Part shown: positions 32,065 to 62,142 of the stretch, one piece after another
How the letters are laid out: every line of letters starts with the position of its first letter
Numbering within the stretch: position 1 is the stretch's first letter
IMG/VR virus record: IMGVR_UViG_3300042455_001086
Coordinates: 193,167-257,166 of that record
Length of the DNA: 64,000 nt
Strand: one strand, 5' to 3'
Translations under genes and position numbers: made by a program
The notes under the pieces: generated by a model
What the model was told of the DNA's origin: nothing
The model's input: the letters and a program-made list of their open reading frames with translations, nothing else
Databases searched by the model: none

Positions 32065-33648
32065 TTAATCAATAGTTAATTCCCAACGAATATTTCCACA
32101 ATCATATATCCTATAAATTTTTCTATCAAACATAATTTGTTTTTCTGTTTTATCTTTATCATAACCCTCTTTCACCAGATTTGATTTATTAAAATTAAAT
32201 CTATAATGTCTTTTATCACCAATTACATACCAATAATTTGGTTTTGATTGTGAAATCATTTTAAAATTTAATTTCTCATACATTTTACCGTCAAAAATTC
32301 TAACATCAGAATATGATATTAACTTTTCTGGTTTATATGTTGAAACAAAAGACTTTAATAATTTCGATGCCGATCCAATAACATTTGTGTTTATCTTATT
32401 ACAAAATCTATTTAATTCCCATTCATCTTTTTTTCCTCCCATAATAATTCTACCTCTTGAAAATGTCATAAGTGATATTAATTCATCATTATGATATAGT
32501 CCTAGTTTTACACTTGAATTAACATTTCCCTGGATGTGGTTTTCATCTAAAAACTTTTTAGATTCTGGTGTTGATACTTCTTTTATAATACACTTTCTAG
32601 CATATATCTTATTTTCACTAATGTTAAGTTTATTTTTTATAATTGATTTTACAATCTCTTTTTTATATATCCATTCGTCTTCAAAAATATGAACTAAACC
32701 AATTCCAAGATTATTACATTTAATCGTCTTTTCCAAATGATAATTTGGTGATTTAAATAATTCATTATGCCAATATAGACCATTGAACTCAAACCCCATT
32801 TTATACTCCGGAATAAATAAATCGACTTCAGCTTTTGAATTAGGTAATTTATAATTTGTTATGTGTGTGATATTAATCTCGGTTAAAAACTTGGAAATTT
32901 CTTCTTCATAACCACTCCTCTGACTAAAACCAAGCGGGTTACAATTTAAACAACATTCATAATTTCTTTTATGTCGTTCATACAGTAATTGTTTGGGAAG
33001 TTCGGATTCATTTTTACAAGTCGGACAAAAAATAATAACCGAACCTTTTTTAACTTCCTTAAAACTAATATCTGGATATAAATTTTTAAAATCATTAATT
33101 AGTTTGTTTTTGTAATTATTTGATTTTGCATAATTATCAACCCCATATTTTAACTCACAAGTTCTTTTTTGTTTATCAACATTATTGTAACTACTATTAC
33201 CATAATTTATTTCTTTGGTTTTTTTACCCTTTTCAATATTATTGTAATTTTCATTACCGTATTTTTTTAATTTGGTTTCTTTTTGTTTTTTTATGAAATC
33301 ATTATGTTGAGTGTAGAAATCAACACCATACTTTTTATTGAAAGTTTTCTTTTGTCTATTAATTAATTCGTCCTTTGAATTATTTGCACAAGTTAAGGAA
33401 CAGAAATCACCGTATGGTTTATCAAATCTATTTCTAAATTTTATTTCATTGCCGCAAGATACGCATTTTGGTCTTTGTGTTAAATTATGAAAATAAAAAT
33501 ATATTTTTTCTTTAAAGGTTATATTGTCTTGGATATTTTTTGAATATTCAACTATTTTTGAATATAATTCTGGTTCATTATTATTTAACCATTTTTCATT
33601 GGTTTTATAACCAGATTTATTATTAGTTGTAAAAAAAGAAAAATCCAT
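32065..33648 (-). CDS. Hef-like putative homing endonuclease (Zn ribbon, KYG repeats, Vsr-like nuclease, GNAT/Mom-like C-terminus), copy 1
   Basis: CVSC..FCSLTC, KKYGV repeats, VDLFIPEYKMGFEFNGLYWH, IFEDEW, ENHIQG, ELNRFC, SYSD, YDCG. Confidence 0.75.
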   Translation of the reverse strand: MDFSFFTTNNKSGYKTNEKWLNNNEPELYSKIVEYSKNIQDNITFKEKIYFYFHNLTQRPKCVSCGNEIKFRNRFDKPYGDFCSLTCANNSKDELINRQKKTFNKKYGVDFYTQHNDFIKKQKETKLKKYGNENYNNIEKGKKTKEINYGNSSYNNVDKQKRTCELKYGVDNYAKSNNYKNKLINDFKNLYPDISFKEVKKGSVIIFCPTCKNESELPKQLLYERHKRNYECCLNCNPLGFSQRSGYEEEISKFLTEINITHITNYKLPNSKAEVDLFIPEYKMGFEFNGLYWHNELFKSPNYHLEKTIKCNNLGIGLVHIFEDEWIYKKEIVKSIIKNKLNISENKIYARKCIIKEVSTPESKKFLDENHIQGNVNSSVKLGLYHNDELISLMTFSRGRIIMGGKKDEWELNRFCNKINTNVIGSASKLLKSFVSTYKPEKLISYSDVRIFDGKMYEKLNFKMISQSKPNYWYVIGDKRHYRFNFNKSNLVKEGYDKDKTEKQIMFDRKIYRIYDCGNIRWELTID

Positions 33649-33710: not shown

Positions 33711-34199
33711 CTAATAAACTAAGATACAACGATCCATAACAATCGTGGAAGATATTGTTGAAACCTCATCTCCACCATATTTTAAAGATCCCCCATCGTA
33801 TCCGGTAAGCCAAGCACCTTCAAGAATCCATTTTTCAACAACAACTCCTGTTGGATCTAACATTTCAAGATCAACATTTTTCTTATATCCAGCGGCATAA
33901 CCCATACGACCAGTTACAGATTCAGCACAAGTTCTAATCCATTCCATAATAGCTTGTGTTGCAGACGGTCCGATTGGATCTCTAAATACAACAGGAAGTG
34001 ATTCCCAATTAAATTTACCAGCAACATAAACCTCAGTATTTAAGAATGGGATTGGAACTGAATTTATTTTTAATTTTGGTCGTGATGTGCTTTCAACATA
34101 CCATTCATTTATCCCCAAAGAAGAAGGGAATCTCAAGATCCACCTATTATTACGTTTAGGTTCGTAAGGGATAGGCATTTTCATTAATAAATCAGCCAT
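33711..34199 (-). CDS. Tail tube protein (gp19-like)
   Basis: YEPKRNNRWIL, YVAGKFNW, GYKKNVDLEMLDPTGVVVEKWILEGAW; downstream of sheath. Confidence 0.85.
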   Translation of the reverse strand: MADLLMKMPIPYEPKRNNRWILRFPSSLGINEWYVESTSRPKLKINSVPIPFLNTEVYVAGKFNWESLPVVFRDPIGPSATQAIMEWIRTCAESVTGRMGYAAGYKKNVDLEMLDPTGVVVEKWILEGAWLTGYDGGSLKYGGDEVSTISSTIVMDRCILVY

Positions 34200-36867: not shown

Positions 36868-38391
36868 TTAATTTATTTTCAATTCAAATTTTAACGAACC
36901 ACAATCCCATATCCTATCATATTTTTTTAATTTCATAATTTCCCATTCTGTTAATTCTTTATTGTAACCTTCTTTGACTAAAACATCTTTCCTAAACGAA
37001 AATCTATGTGATCTATTTAAATATCTTTCTGTGTTTATATACCAATAATTTGGTGGTGTTTGTTTTACGAAATTAAAACCATTTTTAAAATACACAGTTT
37101 TTGTTTGATCTAAACCAGACCATCGAATATCAGCAAATGTTTCTATTTTAGATGGATTATATTTTTTAATGAAGTTCTTTAATAGTTTAGAAAATCCACC
37201 AATAATTGTTAAATTAATTTTATTACAAAATCTAACTAACTCATATTCTGAATTATCCCTATTATCATTACCTAATGATTTTCTTTTTTTTCCAAATGTC
37301 ATAACAGAAACTAATTCATCATTATAAAATAGACCAAATCTAACCTTATCTATCGAATTTCCTTGTAAATGGTTATTTGTTAAAAACAATGAGGATTCTT
37401 TTTTTGGAATTTCTTTTATTTCACATTTTCTGGCGAAAATTTTATTACTCAATTCTAATTTATTTTTTAATTTTGACAACACAATATCTTTCTTTAATAA
37501 GATTTCATCTTCATAAAATTGAATGAGGGTGATTCCTTTATCATAACAAAGTTTTGTTTTATCAATATGATAATTTTTTGTTTTTTCACCACTTATTTCA
37601 GAATGGTAATAATTACCATTAACCTCAATTCCAATATTATAATCCGGTAAATAAATATCTATTTCTCTACCATTTAGTATTTTTCTATCACCATCAATAT
37701 GTTTAACACCTATACTATTTAGATAATCTTTAATTATTTGTTCCAGTTTTGAATTTTTAATAATTGGGTAACACTTACGACATATCGGAATTTTACCAGA
37801 ACCTAAAATTGTGCTACTAAAGATATTGTCACATTTACAACATTTAAACATATAAGGTTGTGATGTTTTACCACTTTTATTAGCCACATATGTATCTAAT
37901 ATCTCAAGATTATTTTCATTTAATTTTGGTAGTAAATTTAATAAATGTTTATCTCTCAATGTTGATTTTAATTTGTCGACAAATTCCGGAACTAACATTG
38001 GGGATTTAACTCCGTATTTTTTCATAAAAATACTCTCATACGACTCTTTGAATTCTTTTGTTTTAAACAAACTATCAACCCCATATTTTTGACGGAGTGT
38101 GTTCTTCGATTTGCCTAACCGATATTCAATATGTTTAGGATTTGAGTTCCATAATATTCTACATTCTTCCGAACATATTTTTTTCTGATGTTTCTTCCTT
38201 TCTTCAAATTCTTTACCACATTGAACGCAAGTTCTTATTTCTCTAACATTAGAGTCTTTCGTCTTACCAAGTAATTTATTCTTTCTAGCGTAGTTAAAAT
38301 AACAACTTCTATCACAAAATTTCTTATCTCTGTGTTTAAAATCAGTAATAAATGATTTATTACAAGATAAACATTCTAATTCAACTTTCAT
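36868..38391 (-). CDS. Hef-like putative homing endonuclease, copy 3
   Basis: Probable start MKVELECLSC (38391); two Cys4 motifs, KYGV repeats, EIDIYLPDYNIGIEVNGNYYH, NNHLQG, ELVRFC, WDCG. Confidence 0.75.
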   Translation of the reverse strand: MKVELECLSCNKSFITDFKHRDKKFCDRSCYFNYARKNKLLGKTKDSNVREIRTCVQCGKEFEERKKHQKKICSEECRILWNSNPKHIEYRLGKSKNTLRQKYGVDSLFKTKEFKESYESIFMKKYGVKSPMLVPEFVDKLKSTLRDKHLLNLLPKLNENNLEILDTYVANKSGKTSQPYMFKCCKCDNIFSSTILGSGKIPICRKCYPIIKNSKLEQIIKDYLNSIGVKHIDGDRKILNGREIDIYLPDYNIGIEVNGNYYHSEISGEKTKNYHIDKTKLCYDKGITLIQFYEDEILLKKDIVLSKLKNKLELSNKIFARKCEIKEIPKKESSLFLTNNHLQGNSIDKVRFGLFYNDELVSVMTFGKKRKSLGNDNRDNSEYELVRFCNKINLTIIGGFSKLLKNFIKKYNPSKIETFADIRWSGLDQTKTVYFKNGFNFVKQTPPNYWYINTERYLNRSHRFSFRKDVLVKEGYNKELTEWEIMKLKKYDRIWDCGSLKFELKIN

Positions 38392-38460
38392 CGGTAAAAT
38401 ATATTTAATAGTTATGAGTATGTCTCTACAAATAAATATACGAAGATAATATAAAAAAAC

Positions 38461-38491
38461 AAAATCCCCCAAAAAAAATTTGAGGGATTTT
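38461..38491 (-). terminator. Terminator-like hairpin after sheath gene
   Basis: AAAATCCC.CAAA ... TTTG.GGGATTTT. Confidence 0.55.
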
Positions 38492-38514: not shown

Positions 38515-41500
38515 CTAAATATTATCAAAAGATGCACCAGTTGGTGTAATATAGAAGGTAATATCTATAAATTCTAACGAACGAGTTGGTTTAATATAGA
38601 TTTTACCAGTCAATTGATTTCTATCTAAATCAGCAGTATCACTTGACACCTCAACTCGGAAATCATATAGACCTCTATCTCTTCTAATAGCATCCAAGAT
38701 TGGATTAACCGCATTCAAGAAATCTTGTCTTACTTGTTCATCATTTTGGTCAAACAACAATCTTACAGAAACCGCTGAAATTAACTTACGAGCTTGTAAT
38801 AACAATCTTCTCACATTAATTCTATCAAGTGCGGATTCTCTAACTTGAAGGGTTTTGTTACCCCAGATTACAGTTCCAACATCAGCAAATGTTGCAATTG
38901 GGTTGATTCTACCAACATAAAGAACATCTCTATCTTCTTGAGTTAATTTCTTACGAGCTTTAACCGCATTTACAATACCACGAGTATAACCAGCTGCCGC
39001 AAACCAAGGGAATGCAATATTATCTGTAAGTGCCAAGTTTCTTGTAACCTCAGCCGTTGCTGGGATGTAAATTTGTGTATTATTTACAGTATCTCTTGTT
39101 AATACCCAAGGATAATATGTTGCAGTATAGTTAGAATCAATTCCAGTTTCTTCCAAATTATCAACAGCTTCTTGTGGATAAATTAAATTATCACCTTCAG
39201 TTGTTGATGCTACAAACATATTATAGTCTGGTGTTGTTGTAATGTATAATGAATCCGCTCTATCATTCTCAATCATATCAATAGTAGCTTCAACTAAATC
39301 ACTATTATTTACATAATCAATCCCTGGTGATACAAATACATTAATATTAACAGCTTCAGGATTAGCAAATGTTCTAATACCAAGTAAATACGCGTAGTAA
39401 TCGGTGTTTGCATAATCCATAGTCTGGTCACCAACGGCAATTTGTTTAAATGCACCCCATCCTTTAGCAGTTGGGTATCTGTCTGACACACAAGCACCAT
39501 TTAAGAATCCTTGACGACCTAATACAAATCTATCACCATTTGTTCTATATTCTCTATAAATATCCCAACCATCAAATCCACCATTAACAAATAAAGTGAA
39601 TTTTCTTGAGAATAATCTGTAATATGGACTATCTGGACTTGTAGGTTCAGAAGAGAATGCGGCCGCACCTACATAATATTTAGGAGTTCCACTTGTTGCA
39701 AATGCACTTGAAATTGTAATTCCACTTGCAAATTGATCCATATGGAAACCTTTCGTTTTGTATGACCATTCACCACCTTCCAAATCACAAGTTGAGATAG
39801 GTGCTCTTTTTCCTTTATATTCAAAGAAACTTGTGTCAAAACCAATATTACTTGACATACCAAGGTAAGTTTTTCTAATATTGTCACCAGAAGTTCTAAT
39901 TGCATCATCAGCACCTGAAGCCAAACCAAATGGTGGGTTATATATTACTTCACCTGGGAAATCATATTTGGTCTTATAAACTGGGAATGGAGATTTAACA
40001 CCAACATATTCTCTAAATACATAACCGTCAAATCCACAAGGAAGTGCATCAACTGGCGCATCTTCGTTCATTTCAACCATAATGTATTTAGAATTCATTT
40101 CAAATTCACCGTCTAATGTTCCGATTTTTTTAGCAATAAAGTTATTTTGTGATGGATCCATAGAACAGTTTGTAAATTTCTCAATAACAACCGGATTTGA
40201 ATCAACATCAAAATAATCCCTAACTAATACATCAAATGTTCTATTAGCAAATGAGATATTGATAATTGAGATTTTAACCTCACTATTTGCGGAATTACCA
40301 TCAGAAATAGTGTAGAACTTGAATAAGTTAAATGTTTTCGTACCTCTCAATTCTGATACAACCCAAGGAGATGATGGCGATTGGAATTTTTCTAAATACC
40401 AACCGATTGTATTTGGATCTTCACTTTGAGCCGAATCAAGGGCTGTAAGTTCAGCACTTAAACCTCTGATATAACCTTTTCTCCAACCATAATTTAATAA
40501 CGCTTGGAATCTTTCTTCCAAGAATAATGGAGTTGATGTTCTTGGTTTCCCAAAGTTAGTTCCACCAAATACTTTTGCGATATATTGTGAATCTGATTGA
40601 CTAAACGATGTTTCAAAAATAAAGTTAGTTCCAGAATCGTTTGTTACATTTACAGCAAATGGTAAATATGGGTTTTTAAGAACTCCAGAATATTGACCTG
40701 ACATATTAAGAGTAACATTTGAAATATCAGAAACTTCAAATACTGGATTATTTTCATCTGAATATGTTGCAATACCTCTTGATCTTAATGTTGCAACAAC
40801 CAAATCGTCATAATCTGTATATGTCACACCAGAATAATAATATAGTGTTCCTACTAACATACCTTCAAAACATCTAACATTTACTGGTATTGGAGTTGGT
40901 GCCGGTGTAGTAGTTGGAGTTGGTGTAATACAAGGATTTGTAGGTGTTGGTGTAGGTGTTGCACTCGGAGTAGGTGTAGGTGTCGGTACAATTGGGAAAA
41001 CTTCAGTTAAACCAGACACAAATGTGTAGAATGAAAACCCTGAATATAATCCATTATTTGTATTATTAAATAAAGCATAATACCAAGCATCATTAAATGG
41101 TGATGTATAATCCGTTAAATCACTTGATGGTGATGGAACATTAAATACATTTGTTTCAGCTGAATAACCAAGACTAACTAAACTATCATAGTCATCACCC
41201 CAAATTGAACCATAGTAGTTAATATTTCTAGTTTGAGCTGTAAGTGGATCTCCATTATCTGTAATAATATTAAAGATTTGATCTCTAATGTTAGTATCAA
41301 GTGTTGAAATTGAACCATCAAAGTTTTCGTATTGTTGTAATAAGAATTCATTGGTTAATGGACTAGGTAATGAGTCATATATGATACTATCTTCAGAATT
41401 AGTGCAAGCTGTAAATGGAACCATAAATGTAATTGCACTTGGTATAACACAAATAGTATCACACACATTATTCGGATCTGTTATTGCACTAAGACATAAG

Positions 41501-41868
41501 AAATCAACTGTTTTAGGATCAACATTTGCTTTGGTTACGATAGACCAAGATGGACCAGCGTCATAACCGGATAAACCCAATATTCTTGTAACAAATAATT
41601 GGTTTGATTGTTGTAAATATGCTTTTGCGATATAAGACGCTTCATATTTAGGAATTTGTGTATTCACAAATTTTTCTGGTGAAGTTCCACCAAAGTAGGT
41701 TTGGAATTCATCATAGTTTCTAATAAAAATTGGTTCAAAAGCAGGACCCTTTAAAGTCTCTCCTGCAATACCCAAAGTTGTAACACCAACACTTTGTGCA
41801 ACAAAGCTTAGATCAACTTCTGAAGTATAAACCCCTGGTGAAACAAATATTTTACTGTTAGTTGCCAT
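38515..41868 (-). CDS. Contractile tail sheath protein (gp18-like) with large insertion including a Pro/Thr tract
   Basis: FVSPGVYTSEVD, TYYPWV, PWFAAAGYTRG, INPIATF..VIWGNKTL..LDRINVRRL, IKPTRSLEFIDITF. Confidence 0.92.
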   Translation of the reverse strand: MATNSKIFVSPGVYTSEVDLSFVAQSVGVTTLGIAGETLKGPAFEPIFIRNYDEFQTYFGGTSPEKFVNTQIPKYEASYIAKAYLQQSNQLFVTRILGLSGYDAGPSWSIVTKANVDPKTVDFLCLSAITDPNNVCDTICVIPSAITFMVPFTACTNSEDSIIYDSLPSPLTNEFLLQQYENFDGSISTLDTNIRDQIFNIITDNGDPLTAQTRNINYYGSIWGDDYDSLVSLGYSAETNVFNVPSPSSDLTDYTSPFNDAWYYALFNNTNNGLYSGFSFYTFVSGLTEVFPIVPTPTPTPSATPTPTPTNPCITPTPTTTPAPTPIPVNVRCFEGMLVGTLYYYSGVTYTDYDDLVVATLRSRGIATYSDENNPVFEVSDISNVTLNMSGQYSGVLKNPYLPFAVNVTNDSGTNFIFETSFSQSDSQYIAKVFGGTNFGKPRTSTPLFLEERFQALLNYGWRKGYIRGLSAELTALDSAQSEDPNTIGWYLEKFQSPSSPWVVSELRGTKTFNLFKFYTISDGNSANSEVKISIINISFANRTFDVLVRDYFDVDSNPVVIEKFTNCSMDPSQNNFIAKKIGTLDGEFEMNSKYIMVEMNEDAPVDALPCGFDGYVFREYVGVKSPFPVYKTKYDFPGEVIYNPPFGLASGADDAIRTSGDNIRKTYLGMSSNIGFDTSFFEYKGKRAPISTCDLEGGEWSYKTKGFHMDQFASGITISSAFATSGTPKYYVGAAAFSSEPTSPDSPYYRLFSRKFTLFVNGGFDGWDIYREYRTNGDRFVLGRQGFLNGACVSDRYPTAKGWGAFKQIAVGDQTMDYANTDYYAYLLGIRTFANPEAVNINVFVSPGIDYVNNSDLVEATIDMIENDRADSLYITTTPDYNMFVASTTEGDNLIYPQEAVDNLEETGIDSNYTATYYPWVLTRDTVNNTQIYIPATAEVTRNLALTDNIAFPWFAAAGYTRGIVNAVKARKKLTQEDRDVLYVGRINPIATFADVGTVIWGNKTLQVRESALDRINVRRLLLQARKLISAVSVRLLFDQNDEQVRQDFLNAVNPILDAIRRDRGLYDFRVEVSSDTADLDRNQLTGKIYIKPTRSLEFIDITFYITPTGASFDNI
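40885..40996 (-). repeat. Mucin-like (PT)n tract in tail sheath
   Basis: PIVPTPTPTPSATPTPTPTNPCITPTPTTTPAPTPIP. Confidence 0.85.
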
Positions 41869-43709: not shown

Positions 43710-44398
43710 ATAAGTTATGTTTTTTTACAAATTTAAATATAATTTTATTACTACATCCATAAATATTACCTATCTGAACATAGTTTAGTCCATTTATTAA
43801 ATGGTTTTTTATTTCATCAACCACTAAATTATAAATATTAGATTTTGGTTTATATATTTCATATTGTCTTAAATTTTTATTAATTGTGTTTATAGCACAA
43901 TTAAATAAATTACTAATTTCTTTTATAGTTTTATTTTTTATAATATGTGAACTACCCAACCACTAAAGATGGTTGGGCTTCAGGACTCGTAGACTCACCT
44001 AATGGTAACGCCTCCTCCTGTTTTTGTTTAATGTCCGATTCTATTCTATAACCAGACAATATGTTTATTCCTTGTTTCAGGATGTTTTTACCTAATATTG
44101 GATTTATATTACCACCATCAGCAAGGTTAAATAAATCAAAATTTAATTGTCTATATTTTGAAATTTCGTCTATTTCAGCTTGTAATAAATCATCATATGA
44201 TTTACATTCTTTTATTTGTCTAATTATTGGTCTTTTATTTTCATTTTTTAAATCATTAAACCAAGATGCGATAAATTGATTTGTTGGTGATTTTAAATGA
44301 CCGTTTAATCTTCTTTGTAGTCCATTTTTTGTTATACCAATATACTTTAATTCGTTAGTGTCTGGACAAAATAAACCATATAATTCAAACCTATTCAT
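43699..44398 (-). pseudogene. GIY-YIG homing endonuclease gene interrupted by an IS200/IS605 end fragment
   Basis: N-part LYGL..KYIGIT..RRLNGH..E..FNLADGG (44398-44090); C-part with two HTH-like repeats (43699-43946). Confidence 0.7.
43947..44090 (-). mobile_element. IS200/IS605-family right end with tnpB 3' tail (omegaRNA region) remnant
   Basis: Translates KNILKQGINILSG...KQK.EEA...PEAQPSLVVG (TnpB C-terminal tail type); hairpin CCCAACCA-TCTTTAG-TGGTTGGG then TAGTTCAC end; GC-richer than flanks. Confidence 0.7.
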
Positions 44399-55606: not shown

Positions 55607-56734
55607 TTATGAAGATATTTCTGTCGCAAAGCAAATTTCTCCTTTTTCTCTAATTAATCTTTCCATATCATTGAAGGAAATATAAGCTGTGCCATTTATA
55701 CCCCAACTTCTACCCCAACTATTTTTCATTCTAAATATTCTTTTTCTTGTGTCAACACCATTTATCACATAGGCATGACCTCCAAGTAAAGGACCACCAA
55801 TTCTTATATTTCCATTTCTATCTGGAAAGAACATATTTCTATACCAATTTGTCCCAACCACTACCGGTCCAATATTTAAAACAGAATCAATTAATGTTTG
55901 AAGTGTATAACCCCAATAATAATTTCTTACCTTACCTACTTGTTGTAGATATTTTACACCACCCCTTACCGAAGTTCCATTATAGTTTTCACCTGGCCAT
56001 TCATCAAGTTTTTGAGCGTTTTCATAAATTATTTTAGGTTGAATGATTGGCGCAACACCTGGTTGTCCAATTGGACCGTCTTCCAACCAATGAGCCCAAG
56101 AAAAACCAACACAATGCGGTGTATTTCCTTGATTTCCCCACCATCCATTATCATCCCAATATCTTGATGTTATTGTCACCCTTGATCTTGATGAGGTTAA
56201 AAGGTGGTTTTCAATTAAATAATTATTATCCCGTTCATCTGGCTTATGTGTTCTACCAAGTGGAAATTCTGTTTCGACAACTGTTGTTGTTGCTGTTACT
56301 GGAATAACTGGTGTTGAAACACAACAAGGAAATTCTGAAACATAACAACTTTCATATGGTAAATCATCACCTATAAAACTTTCTTGGATATTAATATATA
56401 ATTTTTCTCTTATCGGTAAAATTAAAACACCCTCGTTCTCGGTTCTAAATAAAAACTGACCTTCAAATCTCCCAACCTTATTTGTGTCTTTTGACTGGAA
56501 TTGGTAATAAACATAATACTCAACCGGAGCATTTGGATCCGTAAATTCTTTTTTTGTGAAACCAGCCGGCCTTGTCACTATTTTTGGAATTCCGGTTTCA
56601 ACATCTGACATTGAAAAGAATATTGCTGATTCCTCAATGAAATTCATAAAACTATTGTAGTCACTTCTACCGTCTTTTACCACTTGAATTTTTAACAATG
56701 GTAATGTTGCGTTCTTTTTAATATAAAATTCCAT
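55607..56734 (-). CDS. BppU-like N-terminal domain fused to papain-family (C1A) cysteine peptidase
   Basis: NQGNTPHCVGFS (Gln, Cys), GGHAYVI (His), KNSWG..WG (Asn); N-term FYIKKNATLP..YQFQSKDT..GRFEGQF. Confidence 0.75.
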   Translation of the reverse strand: MEFYIKKNATLPLLKIQVVKDGRSDYNSFMNFIEESAIFFSMSDVETGIPKIVTRPAGFTKKEFTDPNAPVEYYVYYQFQSKDTNKVGRFEGQFLFRTENEGVLILPIREKLYINIQESFIGDDLPYESCYVSEFPCCVSTPVIPVTATTTVVETEFPLGRTHKPDERDNNYLIENHLLTSSRSRVTITSRYWDDNGWWGNQGNTPHCVGFSWAHWLEDGPIGQPGVAPIIQPKIIYENAQKLDEWPGENYNGTSVRGGVKYLQQVGKVRNYYWGYTLQTLIDSVLNIGPVVVGTNWYRNMFFPDRNGNIRIGGPLLGGHAYVINGVDTRKRIFRMKNSWGRSWGINGTAYISFNDMERLIREKGEICFATEISS

Positions 56735-56764: not shown

Positions 56765-57862
56765 CTATAATATAATTTCTTCTTTACATTTTTTTAATGC
56801 ACATTCTATTACTTGGTGCATATCATAGTATTTATATTCCGCCAATCTACCACCAAAAATTATATTTTCTTCTTTGTCGGCTAATGTTTTATACTGACTA
56901 TATTTGAAATTGTTTTCTTGATCATTGACAGGATAATAAGGTTCTGTTTTTTTTGCTGAATAGTCTGTTGGATATTCCCAACTAACCCAACTCACATTTG
57001 ATTCGGTTTTTTCAAAATGTTTATGTTCTATAATTCTCGTAAATGAAACTTCGGAATCCGTGAAGTTCATCATAGCACACCCTTGATAATTCTCAGTTTC
57101 AAATTTCTTGTGATTAAATTCTGTTGTTTTATATTCCAATTCTCCAAATTTATAGTTATAGAAAGCATCTATTGGACCTGTGTATATTATTTTTTTTGTA
57201 ACTGAATTCCAATATTCTTTATCCGATAAGTAATCCACATTTAATTTTACCTCAATTCCATCTAATAATTTTTCAAATATTTGGGTATAACCACCTATTG
57301 GTATTCCTTGATACTTGTCATTAAAATAATTATTATCGTATGTAAATCTAACTGGTAGTCTTTTTATTATTTCTTTTGGTAATAATCTAGGATCTTTTTT
57401 CCATTGTTTAGTTGTATAACCTTTTATTAGTTTTTCATAAACATCTCTACCAACCAACTTTATGGCTTGTTCTTCCAAGTTTTTTGGTTCTATAATTTCA
57501 CTACCTTGTTCTTCTATTATTTTTTTTGCTTCACTTGGTTGTGTAATATTCCATAATTTTGAGAATGTCCACATATTAAAAGGTAATGAGTAAATTTCAT
57601 TTTTATAATTTGCAACAGCTCTTAGTGTGAAATCATTGAAGGAAACGAATTGATTTATCCATTCCCAAACTTCATCATTAGAGGTGTGAAAAATGTGGGG
57701 ACCATAATCGTGAACATTAATACCATCTCTGTTAGATGTATAGCAATTTCCACCAATGTGGTTGCGTTTTTCTAATACTAAACAATTATATCCTTTTTTT
57801 GTAAGTTCGTGAGCACAAATAGAACCGAAAAATCCAGAACCAACAATTATATAATCATACAT
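56765..57862 (-). CDS. glf: UDP-galactopyranose mutase
   Basis: GSGFFG, HIGGNC, HDYGPHIFHT, YQGIP, EPYYP, GRLAEYKYYDMHQVI. Confidence 0.95.
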   Translation of the reverse strand: MYDYIIVGSGFFGSICAHELTKKGYNCLVLEKRNHIGGNCYTSNRDGINVHDYGPHIFHTSNDEVWEWINQFVSFNDFTLRAVANYKNEIYSLPFNMWTFSKLWNITQPSEAKKIIEEQGSEIIEPKNLEEQAIKLVGRDVYEKLIKGYTTKQWKKDPRLLPKEIIKRLPVRFTYDNNYFNDKYQGIPIGGYTQIFEKLLDGIEVKLNVDYLSDKEYWNSVTKKIIYTGPIDAFYNYKFGELEYKTTEFNHKKFETENYQGCAMMNFTDSEVSFTRIIEHKHFEKTESNVSWVSWEYPTDYSAKKTEPYYPVNDQENNFKYSQYKTLADKEENIIFGGRLAEYKYYDMHQVIECALKKCKEEIIL

Positions 57863-57865
57863 AAA

Positions 57866-58555
57866 TTATTTTCTTATAAAGTGATAATCAGCATCAGGAC
57901 CATTACCACAAAAATATTTATTATTACTTTTATTTGAAACAAGCTCGAAACCTAAAGATTCTATAAAGGGAATTGATTCATCTATTTTTTTAGCACCTAA
58001 ATTATATTCAACATGTTGTAATTCCACAATCATATGTTTAACATTTTTGAGTGTTTCTTTCATTCCTTTTAAAATATCAATTTCGGCACCTTGAACATCA
58101 ATTTTCACAAAGTCAGGTAATCTGAATTTTTGATTAAATACAATAGTGTCTATTTTTTTTGTCAGTCTTATTTCATAAGATTTTTCATCATATATGTTTT
58201 TAGCCGCGGGAGAAAAAATTTCATTTTCTTTATAATAAGAATTACCACCCAAATAAAGTGGGTGATTATAAAATATTAATTCTTTATCGTCCATATCACT
58301 AAAAACATTCAAAGAAAATGTAGAACCATATTCCAAATAAAATTCTTCAACTTGTAAAACTGCTTCAAAATTATAATATATTGAATTAGACCATATTTTT
58401 TTAGCCTCTTTAGTCCAATGAAGAACCGCAGAACCTATGTCATAAATAACTTTAGGATAGTAATCAATTGATTTCAGGTACTCAATATGTTGAATTGGGA
58501 TACTAGAATCATTATGTAATCTCCAATAGTAATCTGTGTAATCTCTATTACCCAT
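57866..58555 (-). CDS. FkbM-family SAM-dependent methyltransferase
   Basis: IYDIGS, FEA, DFVKIDVQGAEIDILKG, IVEL. Confidence 0.85.
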   Translation of the reverse strand: MGNRDYTDYYWRLHNDSSIPIQHIEYLKSIDYYPKVIYDIGSAVLHWTKEAKKIWSNSIYYNFEAVLQVEEFYLEYGSTFSLNVFSDMDDKELIFYNHPLYLGGNSYYKENEIFSPAAKNIYDEKSYEIRLTKKIDTIVFNQKFRLPDFVKIDVQGAEIDILKGMKETLKNVKHMIVELQHVEYNLGAKKIDESIPFIESLGFELVSNKSNNKYFCGNGPDADYHFIRK

Positions 58556-59729
58556 TCAATAAACTATTAATAAAATTTGTCCACATATCTCCTACTTTAT
58601 TTTTGTTGAATTTTTCTAAAATATAATCTTTTCCATTTTCTATTATTTTATTTTTAAATTCTGGATTTTCTTCTAAAAAATTTACTTTGGATACGATATT
58701 ATCAGAATATTTAAAAATACCATCAATGTCTTTTGATAAAGGTTCGTTTTGCATCTTATTTGGGTCTGAACCCGGAGGAAAATTCAACCAAGCGCAATAC
58801 CCATCAAAATTTTCAGGTAAAGCACCTAATGGATATGTCACCGGAATACAACCTAACGCAATAGCTTCTGCAACAACACAAGAAAAAGTGTCTTTATGAA
58901 CATCTTGATATGGTGTATATAGAGGATAAATAAAATATTCACTTTCGGCCAAATGTGTAAATAATGTTTTTTTATCCACACTATTATGTAGTTTAAAAAA
59001 AGAATCTGAATGTGCGTGTGTTGCCAATAAATAATCAAAGGCGTGGAATTCACAATCCTTGAAATTTAATTTTCTAACCGCTTCCACCGCAACATCACCA
59101 CCTCTTGCCCATGCTGCATGAAAAATAAATTTATGTTTTTTCTTTTTTGGGTTATTTAATAATACTTCATTTATTACATCATCCATTATTGGGTTTGGTA
59201 TTATTGTTGAAATTGTATCTTTACAATTATTTAATAAACTATTAACCACATTTTGGTTCATTTTTTTCTCCCATTCAGATATATTCACAATGCCTAATTT
59301 TAAATTATTGGTATTTACAAAATCAATGATTTCACCCACCCCATATATCCATTGCATATGAGACCAATAAATTAAACCTTTTGAAATTTTGATTGGGATA
59401 TTTTTATAATCAACAAACCATAAACTACTTACTAATATGTCAAATTCTTTGTTTGGTACATTAGTGAAATGTATATCAGTATAACACACGCCTCTTACAT
59501 TCTTTCCAGGTTCAAAACCCAACCCTAATGATTCTAATTTTTTATCTAAATGAGGTTCTAATCTTTCTGATGCAAACACAACTTCATGTCCTTGACTTGC
59601 AAGATATTCGGCAATTAAAATAGAACTTGTATCAGTTCCAGATCCTCCACCACCACCATATCTTAATGTTTCACCATTCAAGTAATTACTTCTTCTACTA
59701 TTTCCTATGACTATAAATGCTATTCTCAT
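58548..59729 (-). CDS. GT-B glycosyltransferase (GT4-like)
   Basis: GGGSGTD..LASQGHEV, DTFSCVVAEAIALGCIPVTYPLGALPE. Confidence 0.8.
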   Translation of the reverse strand: MRIAFIVIGNSRRSNYLNGETLRYGGGGGSGTDTSSILIAEYLASQGHEVVFASERLEPHLDKKLESLGLGFEPGKNVRGVCYTDIHFTNVPNKEFDILVSSLWFVDYKNIPIKISKGLIYWSHMQWIYGVGEIIDFVNTNNLKLGIVNISEWEKKMNQNVVNSLLNNCKDTISTIIPNPIMDDVINEVLLNNPKKKKHKFIFHAAWARGGDVAVEAVRKLNFKDCEFHAFDYLLATHAHSDSFFKLHNSVDKKTLFTHLAESEYFIYPLYTPYQDVHKDTFSCVVAEAIALGCIPVTYPLGALPENFDGYCAWLNFPPGSDPNKMQNEPLSKDIDGIFKYSDNIVSKVNFLEENPEFKNKIIENGKDYILEKFNKNKVGDMWTNFINSLLNG

Positions 59730-60976
59730 ACTATTATTTTTTCATATCTATCACTCCATTGTTTTTCTTCATCGAAGAGATACATAATTATTTTATTTGG
59801 TCTATCCGCTGATTCAAAAAAAGCTCTAAATTTGTTTATTTCTAGATTAACATATTGAGGGTCGTTTTCTAATGTAAAATCTCTTCTATATAGTTCAGCA
59901 CCACTACTATTTGCAACCGCAAAAGTTAAAAACCTTTTATTTATAAAATTATACTTTTTGAAAAAATTTAAATCCCAATCTACCTCAAAATTATACACAT
60001 TTTTGATAAATTGGTTTTCCCAATCAATAGGATTTGGTGGTTCTTTAACTTTTAGAGTATAGTCTTGGATTATACATTTTTTAAAATCAAATCCTCCATA
60101 AACTTCATAATCGTGTAAAGTTCTTTTATTACCCAAACAATAAATACCCATATCAATATCACCCTCATCAGTTCCAAAAAGTTGTCTTGTCTTTTCTCTA
60201 GCAAAAACATCTCTTTGTCCACTGGTTTTTTGTGTTTTACTTTCCTTACCGTGATCTTCCCAATGCTTCGGTCTGTAATTTCTTGTATATTCATGCCACA
60301 TAACCATTCTATATGGACTAAAAAAGTCATAACCATTTGTATATGCTCTAGCACTTAGTGTTGTTTCCTCAACATAACCACCAAAATAAATATCAGGATC
60401 ATATGGTACTTCTTCGATAAATTTTCCATATGTAAAATAAAAATGTCCACTTATTGTTCTTGCTCTAATTATTTTGTCTCTTTCTTTATAATCTTGAATA
60501 TACCAAGGCATTGACATTAAAAGTTTGTCAGAACTAAACTCATATTGAGACATTAATGTTGGTGTTTTATTCCACTTATCTTTATCTTCATTCGGATCAA
60601 ATGGTGTGCAATATGTTGTAATAATAGGTTTTTCGGACACTTCTAATGCTTGATTAAAATCCTCCAAGACAATTTCATCCCAATTTTCAACAAACCTATG
60701 ATGTGAGTCGATTTGTAATGTATATTTTTCTCCACCATATAGTAAATTTGTCACATTTCTAGCCCAACCTAAACCTTGACTTTCTGAATAGTGATATTTT
60801 TTAATCCTAAAATTTGGATTACTATCATATTTAGTAATATCTTCGGTTTCATCGTATTGCCAACAAATCCCAAAAATTAAATTTTCTGGGTGTTTAGCTT
60901 TTTTTAACATATCCTCAATTGTTGGTATAAGCTGGGGATCTCTATAACTTGCGATTTGAACGAAAATTTTATCCAT
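59726..60976 (-). CDS. GT60-like polypeptide/hydroxyproline GlcNAc transferase (GlcNAc, Skp1 Gnt1 type)
   Basis: IFVQIASYRDP, GLGWAR, EKYTLQIDSHHRF..NWD, EVPYDP..FGG..EE..RAYTNGYD..P..WHEY. Confidence 0.8.
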   Translation of the reverse strand: MDKIFVQIASYRDPQLIPTIEDMLKKAKHPENLIFGICWQYDETEDITKYDSNPNFRIKKYHYSESQGLGWARNVTNLLYGGEKYTLQIDSHHRFVENWDEIVLEDFNQALEVSEKPIITTYCTPFDPNEDKDKWNKTPTLMSQYEFSSDKLLMSMPWYIQDYKERDKIIRARTISGHFYFTYGKFIEEVPYDPDIYFGGYVEETTLSARAYTNGYDFFSPYRMVMWHEYTRNYRPKHWEDHGKESKTQKTSGQRDVFAREKTRQLFGTDEGDIDMGIYCLGNKRTLHDYEVYGGFDFKKCIIQDYTLKVKEPPNPIDWENQFIKNVYNFEVDWDLNFFKKYNFINKRFLTFAVANSSGAELYRRDFTLENDPQYVNLEINKFRAFFESADRPNKIIMYLFDEEKQWSDRYEKIIV

Positions 60977-61061
60977 ATATAATTTTTTAATAAAAAAATA
61001 TGGAATAAAATAAAAAGTTGAATGGTTAAATAATTATTATTTTATATAACACCCACCGAAA

Positions 61062-61095
61062 AAACCCACAAATCTTTAGTTCGTGAGTGGTTCAA
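61062..61095 (+). mobile_element. Degenerate solo IS200/IS605-type right end
   Basis: AAACCCACAAA-TCTTTAG-TTCGTGAGTGGTTCAA has the same loop and GTTCA end as the element at 43947-43980. Confidence 0.45.
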
Positions 61096-61110
61096 TAAGT
61101 TGATTTTGAT

Positions 61111-62142
61111 TTAACAACCATCTGTCCTTATTATACATCCGGTTGAAATATTATAAGTAAAGGTTCCTAAACATTGTGGTGTTCGTGGTATTGCACATTG
61201 TTGGACTACTAATAATGGTGGTAATGGGAATGTGTATGTGGCGACTAAAGAACCGCCGACATTTGTAAATCCATAATTACCATCGGAAACCATTGTTCCG
61301 CCGGAATAAACATACATAGCAAGATTAATAACACCAGTTCCTAAGCTTGTATACCAATGGGCTTTTGCTGTAAATTGAATTGTTGGTGCTGAAGGAAATG
61401 CCGTTTTAATATCATTTACTTTAAAATACACCGATTCACTTCCACCTGAGCTTGTATTATCGCCACCCCAATACATATAAGGACCACTAGGAGTAGAACT
61501 ATAGCAAAAACCTAAAGGCCCATTTATTGTTGGTTGTGTTAAAGTTGTTACAGTATCTAAGTCCACCCCCGAACCAGATGGAAATTCATAAACAAAGACT
61601 AAATAATCACCAAGAGCACAAATAGGTGCTACTGGTGTTGGTGTTGGTGTTGGAGGACAAGTTGGTGTTGGACAAAATTGGTTTGAACTACAAGGATCGC
61701 CAATTGTTATTGTAAGATTTGTTTCATTTGTTGGGTTTGAACCACAAGTATAATATGTTATACCACTTTGAATTATAACATCCAAAACATTATTACCATT
61801 ACAATCAGTATAATCAAATGAACCATTGTTTGTTGATGTGTTATCAGCTGTAATACACCTACATAGACTTGTTGGAGTTGGTGTAGGTGTTGCGGTTGGT
61901 GTTGGAGTAGGTGTAGGTGTTGTTGGACAAGAATAATGTTGGAAAGTTTCACAACCATCGTCATCACTTACAATAACAATAACTGAATTTGCAACATCTA
62001 AAGGGGCTGGAACATTAAAAGTGTATGGGACTGAACTAAATGTTCCTGGAACATTAAAACAATTTGTTATTGATATATTACAAACTTGAGCCTGATATGG
62101 CGCATTACCCGTTACTCCTGTTATTGTTATTTGGTGTGGCAT
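61111..62142 (-). CDS. Cys-rich multidomain protein with mucin-like (PT)n linkers
   Basis: CPTTPTPTPTPTATPTPTPTS and CPTPTCPPTPTPTP separating three Cys-containing beta domains. Confidence 0.7.
   Translation of the reverse strand: MPHQITITGVTGNAPYQAQVCNISITNCFNVPGTFSSVPYTFNVPAPLDVANSVIVIVSDDDGCETFQHYSCPTTPTPTPTPTATPTPTPTSLCRCITADNTSTNNGSFDYTDCNGNNVLDVIIQSGITYYTCGSNPTNETNLTITIGDPCSSNQFCPTPTCPPTPTPTPVAPICALGDYLVFVYEFPSGSGVDLDTVTTLTQPTINGPLGFCYSSTPSGPYMYWGGDNTSSGGSESVYFKVNDIKTAFPSAPTIQFTAKAHWYTSLGTGVINLAMYVYSGGTMVSDGNYGFTNVGGSLVATYTFPLPPLLVVQQCAIPRTPQCLGTFTYNISTGCIIRTDGC

What the first reader, a model, noticed from the sequence alone, without database searches (positions are those of the whole stretch)
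40885..40996. Mucin-like Pro/Thr tract grafted into the contractile tail sheath
Seen: a ~37-aa PT-rich tract with nearby Cys lies inside a large N-terminal insertion of an 1117-aa sheath (T4 gp18 is about 660 aa). Inference: it sits in an outward-facing domain and is displayed on every sheath subunit, making it an obvious acceptor for the glycosylation cassette and a potential glycan brush along the tail.
Basis: partly seen in the sequence, partly recalled or inferred. Interest (0 to 1): 0.65.

Follow-up and report, generated by a model that had tools for sequence, protein, structure and literature searches.

The report
Thr/Pro-rich surface tract on phage sheath
A jumbo phage that probably infects Bacteroidota has a short, disordered threonine/proline-rich stretch in the outer part of every tail-sheath subunit. 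The same genome encodes an enzyme of the family that starts mucin-type sugar coats in protists, so a sugar-coated tail is plausible but unproven.

Summary
The window lies in a complete 257-kb jumbo-phage record. ORF 38515-41868 (-) is an 1117-aa tail sheath, and residues 292-333 (window 40870-40995) contain 15 Pro and 13 Thr out of 42, with Cys313 and Cys333 invariant.

The tract sits between a clade-specific accessory domain (about 110-291) and the conserved sheath body (334-1117). A confident AlphaFold model (pLDDT 86.8) leaves it disordered between two long strands.

In 184 distinct relatives the tract is kept at 36-43 aa. Its sequence drifts freely between PTPTPT and TTTTTTTT, and Thr and Pro content trade off (r = -0.88).

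The "glycosylation cassette" also exists. It holds a cytoplasmic GT60-type (PF11397) polypeptide GlcNAc-transferase homologue with the DxH motif, UDP-galactopyranose mutase, an FkbM methyltransferase and a second glycosyltransferase.

GT60 genes in viral contigs usually sit next to genes with long PT tracts. All 13 GT60-positive phage genomes tested carry (TP)3 tracts and all 6 GT60-negative ones carry none. Phage XacN1, which has a homologue, has stain-positive virion glycoproteins.

Sheath glycosylation itself is untested. The tightly fixed tract length fits a plain linker equally well. Verdict: real feature; interpretation plausible and partly supported.

The parts
38515..41868 (-). Tail sheath gene, 1117 aa (P0001)
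   Evidence: Pfam PF17482 and PF04984; phrog_23 E 6e-56; T4 gp18 E 2e-32; fold Z about 36 to solved sheaths; AF2 model pLDDT 86.8
41542..41868 (-). N-terminal part of the conserved sheath core (residues 1-109)
   Evidence: Nearly invariant in 47 relatives; aligns to gp18 4-84; first homology block in the 50%-identity representatives
40996..41541 (-). Clade-specific accessory domain 'X' (residues about 110-291), function unknown
   Evidence: Folded at pLDDT about 70-94. Found only in relatives at 62% identity or more; other sheaths carry 0-900 aa of unrelated sequence here. No Pfam or Atlas family
40870..40995 (-). Thr/Pro-rich tract, residues 292-333: two halves separated by an invariant [N/D]PC and closed by invariant Cys333
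   Evidence: Composition and shuffle test; pLDDT below 50 at 299-310 and 314-324; conserved in place and composition in 184 distinct relatives, length 36-43 aa
38518..40869 (-). Conserved sheath body (residues 334-1117): middle domains plus the C-terminal core
   Evidence: Second homology block starts at 334-357 in many 50%-identity representatives; residues 833-1116 align to gp18 361-653
59726..60976 (-). GT60-type (PF11397) glycosyltransferase, 416 aa, DxH motif at D90-S-H92, no N-terminal signal or membrane segment seen on reading the sequence (no predictor run)
   Evidence: PF11397 E 2e-61, 208.6 bits against a cut-off of 21; phrog_24687 E 4e-91; DSH and WH invariant in an alignment that includes XacN1 ORF334
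61111..62142 (-). 343-aa protein with a Cys-flanked PT tract, directly upstream of the GT60 gene
   Evidence: Tract SCPTTPTPTPTPTATPTPTPTSLCRC; phrog_24956, function unknown; the same position holds PT-tract proteins in many related loci
58548..59729 (-). Second glycosyltransferase, probably GT-B type, 393 aa
   Evidence: phrog_2170 'glycosyltransferase' E 2e-7; weak Glycos_transf_1 hit, E 1e-3, below the cut-off
57866..58555 (-). FkbM-family methyltransferase
   Evidence: PF05050 E 2e-12; TIGR01444 43.9 bits against a cut-off of 37.7
56765..57862 (-). UDP-galactopyranose mutase (Glf), the supplier of UDP-galactofuranose
   Evidence: PF03275 E 3e-75 and NAD_binding_8 E 6e-24
33711..34199 (-). 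Tail tube protein
   Evidence: phrog_4542 'tail tube protein' E 2e-23

Best explanation
The tract is a disordered, surface-exposed Thr/Pro-rich segment of about 40 residues. It joins a lineage-specific outer domain (residues 110-291) to the conserved sheath body, so every sheath subunit carries one copy on the outside of the tail. The most likely mechanism is this. After translation in the host cytoplasm, the phage's own soluble GT60-family transferase adds GlcNAc to the Thr (or Ser) residues of this tract and of the other PT tracts in virion proteins. The sugar may then be extended with galactofuranose made by the phage Glf, through the second transferase, and methylated by the FkbM enzyme. 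The result would be a mucin-like glycan layer on the tail. Shown: the tract, its position, its disorder, its conservation in composition, the enzymes' family membership, and the genomic association of GT60 genes with PT tracts. Inferred: that the sheath tract is a substrate, the identity of the sugars, and any shielding or adhesion role.
For: (1) Position: the core is 1-109 plus about 800-1117, and the tract lies in the inserted part. Added sheath domains lie away from the tube (PMC9230969).
(2) Disorder: pLDDT is below 50 in a model with a mean of 86.8.
(3) Selection acts on composition rather than sequence. In 184 distinct relatives T+S+P is always at least 60%, Thr 20-61% and Pro 8-41%, with Thr and Pro anticorrelated at r = -0.88. 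Many relatives are almost pure poly-Thr. The tract is 45% GC in a 30% GC genome.
(4) Enzyme: PF11397 at 208 bits with an invariant DxH motif. That motif replaces DxD in GT27 and GT60 (PMC7185993).
(5) GT60 enzymes start mucin-type O-glycosylation on Thr-rich domains. The T. cruzi assay acceptor is KPPTTTTTTTTKPP, and its glycans carry galactofuranose (PMC3769586, PMC8724618, PMC6939170). The cassette holds Glf.
(6) Association: in about 25 of 50 and in 55 of 80 viral loci, PT-tract ORFs lie within 10 kb of the GT60 gene, very often directly upstream.
(7) (TP)3 DNA tracts: 13 of 13 GT60-positive genomes have 4-34 hits and 6 of 6 GT60-negative phages have none.
(8) Clade records of 100 kb or more with the tract-bearing sheath all carry the gene.
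(9) XacN1 encodes a 35%-identical homologue (ORF334) and has at least two periodic acid-Schiff-positive virion proteins (PMC5852040).
(10) No prolyl-hydroxylase-type oxygenase was found, which favours Thr/Ser over hydroxyproline as the acceptor.
Against: There is no direct evidence that the sheath is modified. The tract length is held at 36-43 aa, whereas PT tracts next to GT60 genes vary from about 20 to over 500 aa. That looks like a linker of fixed span. The sheath gene lies about 19 kb from the cassette. The genomes compared are not phylogenetically independent, and the negative set is small and made up mostly of T4-like phages of other hosts. Xanthomonas and Stenotrophomonas phages with the GT have no tract in their sheaths, so the enzyme clearly has other substrates. 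The glycosylated bands of XacN1 were not identified. Exposure in the assembled sheath could not be measured because no coordinates were available.
Confidence: 0.5

Rival explanations
1. Plain structural linker. The tract is an unmodified, extended, protease-resistant Pro/Thr spacer of fixed length that tethers accessory domain X to the sheath body. The GT60 pathway serves other proteins, such as the PT-rich neighbour gene and the fibre-like proteins.
For: Length is constrained to 36-43 aa in 184 relatives. The tract lies exactly at a domain boundary where homology blocks break. It is flanked by confident strands. PT linkers are common between modules, and other PT tracts in this genome also join Cys-containing modules. 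GT60-positive Xanthomonas phages have tract-free sheaths.
Against: Many relatives replace Pro almost wholly by Thr (as few as 3 Pro against 27-28 Thr), which is not what a stiff Pro spacer needs. A cytoplasmic enzyme whose family acts on exactly such sequences is encoded in every sufficiently complete clade genome. In known systems PT linkers are themselves often O-glycosylated (my own knowledge of cellulase linkers), so this rival and the best explanation are not exclusive.
Confidence: 0.35
2. Disulfide-stapled display or cross-linking loop. Cys313 and Cys333, or Cys of neighbouring subunits, close the second half of the tract into a loop. The loop would stabilise the extended sheath or act as an adhesin toward host or environmental polysaccharide, with or without sugars.
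For: Both Cys are invariant, as is the [N/D]PC motif. Cys on both sides within 6 residues occurs at 7.4% of 823 tracts against 1.7% expected. Similar motifs recur, for example NPCITPTPTPTPTNPC in L185.
Against: No coordinates were available to test the Cys-Cys distance. The first half of the tract has no upstream Cys. Cys enrichment is also expected if PT linkers simply join disulfide-rich modules. Nothing points to a binding function.
Confidence: 0.1
3. The cassette has nothing to do with virion proteins. It would glycosylate phage DNA or remodel host envelope glycans, and the PT tracts are coincidental.
For: The cassette lies next to the DNA polymerase gene here and in XacN1. Phage glycosyltransferases often modify DNA or host antigens (PMC12619734 discussion).
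Against: GT60 is a polypeptide-transferase family (PMC8724618). The only ThyA-family gene scores as an ordinary thymidylate synthase (323.6 bits against a 327 cut-off), not a hydroxymethylase. The recurring adjacency of the GT60 gene to PT-tract genes across divergent loci and the 13/13 versus 0/6 tract pattern are hard to explain otherwise.
Confidence: 0.05

Closest known systems
GT60 polypeptide alpha-GlcNAc-transferases with mucin-like acceptors in protists (T. cruzi TcOGNT-2 with Tc-mucins; Dictyostelium Gnt2)
   Same: Same enzyme family by PF11397 with the DxH motif. The acceptors are Thr-rich runs flanked by Pro (KPPTTTTTTTTKPP), and the T. cruzi glycans carry galactofuranose (PMC3769586). 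The phage cassette has Glf.
   Different: The protist enzymes are Golgi membrane proteins acting on secreted mucins. The phage protein has no membrane segment and would act in the bacterial cytoplasm on virion proteins, more like the soluble Skp1 enzyme Gnt1 (PMC6939170). Activity and sugar identity are untested here.
Mycobacteriophage virion O-glycosylation (Freeman et al. 2023, as cited in PMC12619734; details from my own knowledge)
   Same: Phage-encoded glycosyltransferases decorate repeated structural subunits of the virion, giving a glycan coat.
   Different: There the acceptors are C-terminal extensions of the capsid and tail-tube subunits in siphoviruses of Actinobacteria. Whether those glycosyltransferases are related to GT60 was not checked: the paper is not held and no mycobacteriophage record matched the window's enzyme. 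Here the candidate acceptor is an internal tract of the contractile sheath in a jumbo myovirus that probably infects Bacteroidota.
Xanthomonas jumbo phage XacN1 (ORF334 glycosyltransferase, virion glycoproteins)
   Same: It encodes a 35%-identical GT60-type gene, many PT/T-rich proteins and at least 2 stain-positive virion proteins (PMC5852040).
   Different: Its 714-aa sheath (PMC5852040 supplement) has no tract. The glycoproteins were not identified. Its cassette has a carbamoyl transferase and a GT9 gene; no Glf is annotated in the 25-kb stretch read, and this was not searched for.
Multi-domain sheaths of T4 (gp18) and jumbo phages
   Same: A conserved N-terminal plus C-terminal core, with extra domains inserted after about residue 100 and pointing outward (PMC9230969).
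   Different: At 1117 aa it is far larger than gp18 (659 aa). A survey of 112 contractile sheath proteins mentions no low-complexity Thr/Pro tract or glycosylation (PMC9230969; 'glycos' occurs 0 times).
Pro/Thr linkers of cellulases and other modular extracellular enzymes
   Same: Disordered PT-rich segment between folded modules, and in those systems often O-glycosylated (my own knowledge). A weak low-complexity hit to the glycoside hydrolase chain 8zvk_A fits this.
   Different: Those are secreted enzymes glycosylated by host export-coupled systems, not subunits of a virus machine made in the cytoplasm.

Membership tests
Contractile tail sheath (gp18-like; PF04984/PF17482) | C-terminal sheath domain | tested here: met
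   PF17482 36.7 bits against a cut-off of 26.9; residues 833-1116 align to T4 gp18 361-653, E 2e-32
Contractile tail sheath (gp18-like; PF04984/PF17482) | Subtilisin-like sheath domain PF04984 | tested here: inconclusive
   27.7 bits, below the 31.4 cut-off. However, phrog_23 has E 6e-56 and precomputed PF04984 is listed for most relatives
Contractile tail sheath (gp18-like; PF04984/PF17482) | Two-part core fold made of the N- and C-terminal segments | tested here: met
   VIA-align Z 33-36 to pyocin R2, KP1 and CIS sheaths, spanning model residues 24-1117 with 324-453 aligned
Contractile tail sheath (gp18-like; PF04984/PF17482) | Gene lies near the tail tube gene | tested here: met
   The tube gene is at 33711-34199 (-), 4.3 kb downstream, separated by a homing endonuclease gene and other ORFs
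CAZy GT60 / Pfam PF11397 (window 59726-60976) | Profile match over the whole catalytic domain | tested here: met
   208.6 bits against a cut-off of 21, profile positions 98-351 plus an N-terminal stretch (same pattern). That PF11397 corresponds to GT60 is from my own knowledge
CAZy GT60 / Pfam PF11397 (window 59726-60976) | DxH metal-binding motif in place of DxD | tested here: met
   D90-S-H92, invariant in the alignment with XacN1 ORF334 and four viral homologues; motif described in PMC7185993
CAZy GT60 / Pfam PF11397 (window 59726-60976) | Transfers alpha-GlcNAc from UDP-GlcNAc to Thr/Ser (or Hyp) of a polypeptide | not testable with these tools
   Needs an enzyme assay. The complex prediction gave no verdict
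Mucin-like O-glycosylation domain (the tract) | Dense Ser/Thr/Pro, disordered, low sequence but high compositional conservation | tested here: met
   T+S+P is 60% or more in all 182 normal-length relatives, with 9-27 Thr+Ser per tract; pLDDT below 50
Mucin-like O-glycosylation domain (the tract) | Carries O-glycans | not testable with these tools
   Needs mass spectrometry or glycan staining of virions
Mucin-like O-glycosylation domain (the tract) | Tandem-repeat, length-variable architecture | tested here: not met
   Only a weak 6/12-bp periodicity (TRF score 42-49). Length is fixed at 36-43 aa, unlike the neighbouring PT proteins
Mycobacteriophage-type virion glycosylation | Acceptor is a C-terminal extension of the capsid or tail-tube subunit | tested here: not met
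   Here the tract is internal (292-333 of 1117) and lies in the sheath
Skp1-type hydroxyproline glycosylation (the Gnt1 route) | A prolyl 4-hydroxylase partner | tested here: not met
   No PF13640 or PF03171 match in the complete 257-kb genome. A host enzyme is not excluded

The most novel reading that the evidence does not exclude
An abundant clade of aquatic jumbo phages, and separately the XacN1-like phages, run a cytoplasmic mucin-type O-glycosylation pathway. A GT60 enzyme starts it, and Galf and methyl groups may follow. The pathway would target PT/poly-Thr tracts scattered over virion proteins, including one tract on every sheath subunit, so the whole contractile tail would carry a glycan brush. 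This would be the first mucin-type system assigned to a bacterial virus and the first glycosylated contractile sheath.
Probability: 0.4. Interest if true: 0.8.

Novelty: new variant of a known kind. Interest (0 to 1): 0.6.

Why it matters
Virion glycosylation by phage-encoded enzymes has so far been shown for capsid and tail-tube subunits of mycobacteriophages (cited in PMC12619734), and at least two unidentified glycoprotein bands were reported in XacN1 virions (PMC5852040).

Here a protist-type "mucin initiator" enzyme family occurs in at least 563 viral contig stretches. It sits physically next to mucin-like PT genes. In one very abundant clade (thousands of sheath relatives) a matching acceptor-like tract sits on the sheath.

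If confirmed, this would give a sequence rule (PT/poly-Thr tract plus GT60 gene) for predicting glycosylated phage particles from metagenomes. It would also raise testable questions about what the coat does for a contractile machine, such as shielding, adhesion or protease resistance.

Tried and rejected
- The first AlphaFold run, with 47 close relatives, gave pLDDT 39.5. It was replaced by a deeper alignment built from the representative search.
- A 138-sequence alignment was too large to send.
- Model coordinates are not exposed to scripts, so solvent exposure and the Cys313-Cys333 distance could not be measured.
- Complex prediction of the GT60 protein with sheath residues 270-350 returned no verdict, score 0.00. 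This is not evidence either way.
- The GT60 protein has no sequence relative among solved structures.
- The Atlas search of domain X gave only unnamed viral clusters.
- I looked for tract-less sheath lineages in IMG/VR, using P0129, to build a contrast set. Only the window's own clade and short contigs came back.
- A poly-Thr DNA pattern (6 x ACN) found nothing in four genomes. The window's own tract has no run of six Thr.
- Hydroxyproline route: no 2OG oxygenase was found.
- DNA-glycosylation route: the ThyA homologue is an ordinary thymidylate synthase.
- One mistyped family scan was wasted.
- Freeman et al. 2023 and Pyle et al. 2024 are not held in the library.
Full report
**Where the window lies.** The 64-kb window is bases 193167-257166 of a 257,166-bp viral record. 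The record has inverted terminal repeats and is rated 100% complete. Its GC content is 30%. Its proteins include SprB repeats and a type IX secretion C-terminal sorting domain inside a virion structural protein, which points to a host in the Bacteroidota. A recently described lineage of aquatic jumbo phages with predicted Flavobacteriia hosts and several core glycosyltransferases (PMC12619734) may be the same group. I did not test that.

**The observation.** ORF 38515-41868 on the minus strand encodes 1117 aa.
- It is a tail sheath by Pfam PF17482 above its cut-off, by phrog_23 at E 6e-56 and by similarity to T4 gp18 at E 2e-32.
- Structurally it matches solved sheaths at Z 33-36.
- Residues 292-333 read PIVPTPTPTPSATPTPTPTNPCITPTPTTTPAPTPIPVNVRC, with 15 Pro and 13 Thr in 42 residues.
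- The tract maps to window 40870-40995.
- The enrichment is far beyond chance: the corrected binomial tail is about 6e-11, and the best window has 29 P/T against at most 19 in 2000 shuffles.
- The tract is 45% GC in a 30% GC genome.

**Anatomy of the sheath.** Only residues 9-97 and 833-1116 align to gp18. Only 324-453 residues superpose on solved sheaths, including the minimal pyocin sheath. The remaining 650-780 residues are therefore additions.

A search of 1.8 billion cluster representatives found 7057 relatives. Their homology to the query breaks into an N-terminal block (1 to about 115) and a second block that very often starts at residue 334-357. Between these blocks, other lineages carry 0-900 aa of unrelated sequence and almost never a Thr/Pro tract. 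Residues 110-333 are thus a clade-specific module: a folded domain X followed by the tract.

A second AlphaFold run on an 83-sequence alignment gave mean pLDDT 86.8 and pTM 0.80. The tract is the only internal low-confidence stretch: pLDDT is below 50 at 299-310 and 314-324. It lies between two confident 17-residue strands, 274-290 and 333-349.

A survey of sheath proteins concludes that added domains lie away from the tube-contacting core (PMC9230969). On that topology the tract faces outward.

**Conservation.** The word search returned more than 4300 relatives. The best 120 (72-96% identity) all carry a tract at the same site, as do 80 IMG/VR sheaths and a 62%-identical one. Across 184 distinct sequences:
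- Length is 36-43 aa, median 39.
- Thr is 20-61% and Pro 8-41%, strongly anticorrelated (r = -0.88).
- T+S+P is never below 60%.
- Many relatives are nearly pure poly-Thr, for example TTTTTSTSTTTTTTNPCNPTTTTTTSTTTVKPVKC.
- The central [N/D]PC motif and the closing Cys are invariant, like all ten Cys of the protein.
- Two relatives have a roughly 75-aa domain in place of the first half of the tract, so the site tolerates insertions.

**The cassette.** Downstream of the DNA polymerase gene, the window encodes four relevant enzymes:
- UDP-galactopyranose mutase (E 3e-75).
- An FkbM methyltransferase.
- A probable GT-B glycosyltransferase.
- A 416-aa PF11397 protein (208.6 bits; phrog_24687 E 4e-91).

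PF11397 corresponds to CAZy GT60 (my own knowledge). GT60 enzymes are polypeptide alpha-GlcNAc-transferases. They start mucin-type O-glycosylation in protists and, in a soluble form, modify hydroxyproline of Skp1 (PMC8724618, PMC6939170). GT60 is sister to the animal mucin-initiating GT27 family and shares its DxH motif (PMC7185993).

The phage protein has D90-S-H92, invariant across homologues down to about 35% identity. It starts directly with the first strand of the fold, so I take it to be cytoplasmic. The T. cruzi enzyme is assayed on KPPTTTTTTTTKPP, and its products are extended with galactofuranose (PMC3769586). The parallel with a poly-Thr/Pro tract plus a Glf gene is close. No prolyl-hydroxylase-type oxygenase was found, which favours Thr/Ser as the acceptor.

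**Genomic association.**
- The genome has at least seven ORFs with PT tracts. One of them, a 343-aa protein, lies directly upstream of the GT60 gene.
- In about 25 of 50 related viral loci, the gene directly upstream of the GT60 gene carries a PT tract. Some of these tracts reach 428-517 aa.
- With a more distant query (XacN1 ORF334 first), 55 of 80 further loci have PT/T-rich ORFs within 10 kb, again very often directly upstream.
- Only 4 of 50,697 isolated phage records have the gene: XacN1, Xoo-sp13, CM1 and RAS14.
- A (TP)3 DNA pattern gives 4-34 hits in each of 13 GT60-positive genomes. It gives none in six GT60-negative phages totalling about 1.35 Mb. Reversed-pattern controls gave 0-1 hits.
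- Clade records of 100 kb or more with the tract-bearing sheath all hold the gene.
- XacN1 virions contain at least two periodic acid-Schiff-positive proteins, which its authors attributed to ORF328 and ORF334 (PMC5852040).

These comparisons are not phylogenetically independent and the negative set is small. They show consistency, not proof.

**What argues the other way.**
- Nothing shows that the sheath itself is modified.
- Its tract is held at a fixed length, unlike the highly length-variable tracts next to GT60 genes. It also sits exactly at a domain boundary. Both are features of a structural linker.
- The XacN1-type sheaths have no tract, so the enzyme certainly has other substrates.
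- Cys residues flank PT tracts more often than expected (7.4% against 1.7% for both sides). That may only mean that the tracts join disulfide-rich modules.

**Rivals set aside.** DNA glycosylation is unlikely: the only ThyA-family gene is an ordinary thymidylate synthase, and GT60 is a polypeptide-transferase family. The complex prediction gave no verdict.

**Verdict.** The feature is real and conserved, and it lies in the outer, inserted part of the sheath. An unmodified fixed-length linker is the main rival and is not exclusive with it. No paper in the held library describes a glycosylated tail sheath. I rate this a new variant of a known kind, namely phage-encoded virion glycosylation.

Noticed in passing
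window 59726-62142 (-); loci L003-L052 and L137-L216: The GT60-type gene and a PT-tract protein gene form a recurrent co-directional pair. The tract-bearing ORF usually ends 60-100 nt before the GT start. Its tract ranges from about 20 to over 500 aa and differs in length even between near-identical proteins (L025-L028).
   Followed up: partly
window 40870-40935 (-); G000 18.8-19.3 kb and 172.5-184.5 kb; L185 7633-8328: PT tracts are often flanked by Cys, and an [N/D]PC motif recurs at tract ends (for example NPCITPTPTPTPTNPC). Cys lies on both sides within 6 residues at 7.4% of 823 tracts against 1.7% expected. These may be disulfide-closed loops or simply the edges of Cys-rich modules.
   Followed up: partly
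window 36868-38472 (-) and 32065-33648 (-): Two large paralogous HNH homing endonuclease genes (534 and 527 aa, both phrog_3339 with E below 1e-110) sit in the tail module, one directly downstream of the sheath gene and one downstream of the tube gene. A smaller homing-endonuclease-like ORF lies at 43952-44398.
   Followed up: no
proteins P0116 and P0118 (sheath relatives, 1186-1189 aa): A roughly 75-aa Cys-containing extra domain replaces the first half of the tract, showing that this site accepts whole-domain insertions.
   Followed up: no
L002 11466-14507 (-) = G000 181466-184507: A 1013-aa virion structural protein combines SprB repeats, a type IX secretion C-terminal sorting domain-like module and a 24-aa PT tract. 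The borrowed Bacteroidota surface-protein modules suggest the host phylum.
   Followed up: partly
L051 2255-4081: In one distant viral contig the GT60-like domain (33% identity) lies inside a 1519-aa ORF, so the catalytic domain appears fused to a much larger protein.
   Followed up: no
window 55607-56734 (-): A papain-like peptidase (phrog_16701 E 3e-57; weak Peptidase_C1 hit) lies inside the glycosylation cassette, between unknown ORFs and the Glf gene.
   Followed up: no
L133 22192-25362 and AP018399.1 212688-212839: In XacN1, a 3313-aa protein (ORF325) next to the baseplate wedge gene and about 9 kb from the GT60-type gene carries PT tracts. A run of paralogous genes (ORF232-236) each holds a long T/P/S/V-rich tract.
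   Followed up: partly
window 38515-41868 (-): All ten cysteines of the sheath (125, 136, 140, 155, 313, 333, 568, 611, 694, 793) are invariant in 47 relatives at 72-96% identity. Four of them cluster in domain X.
   Followed up: no
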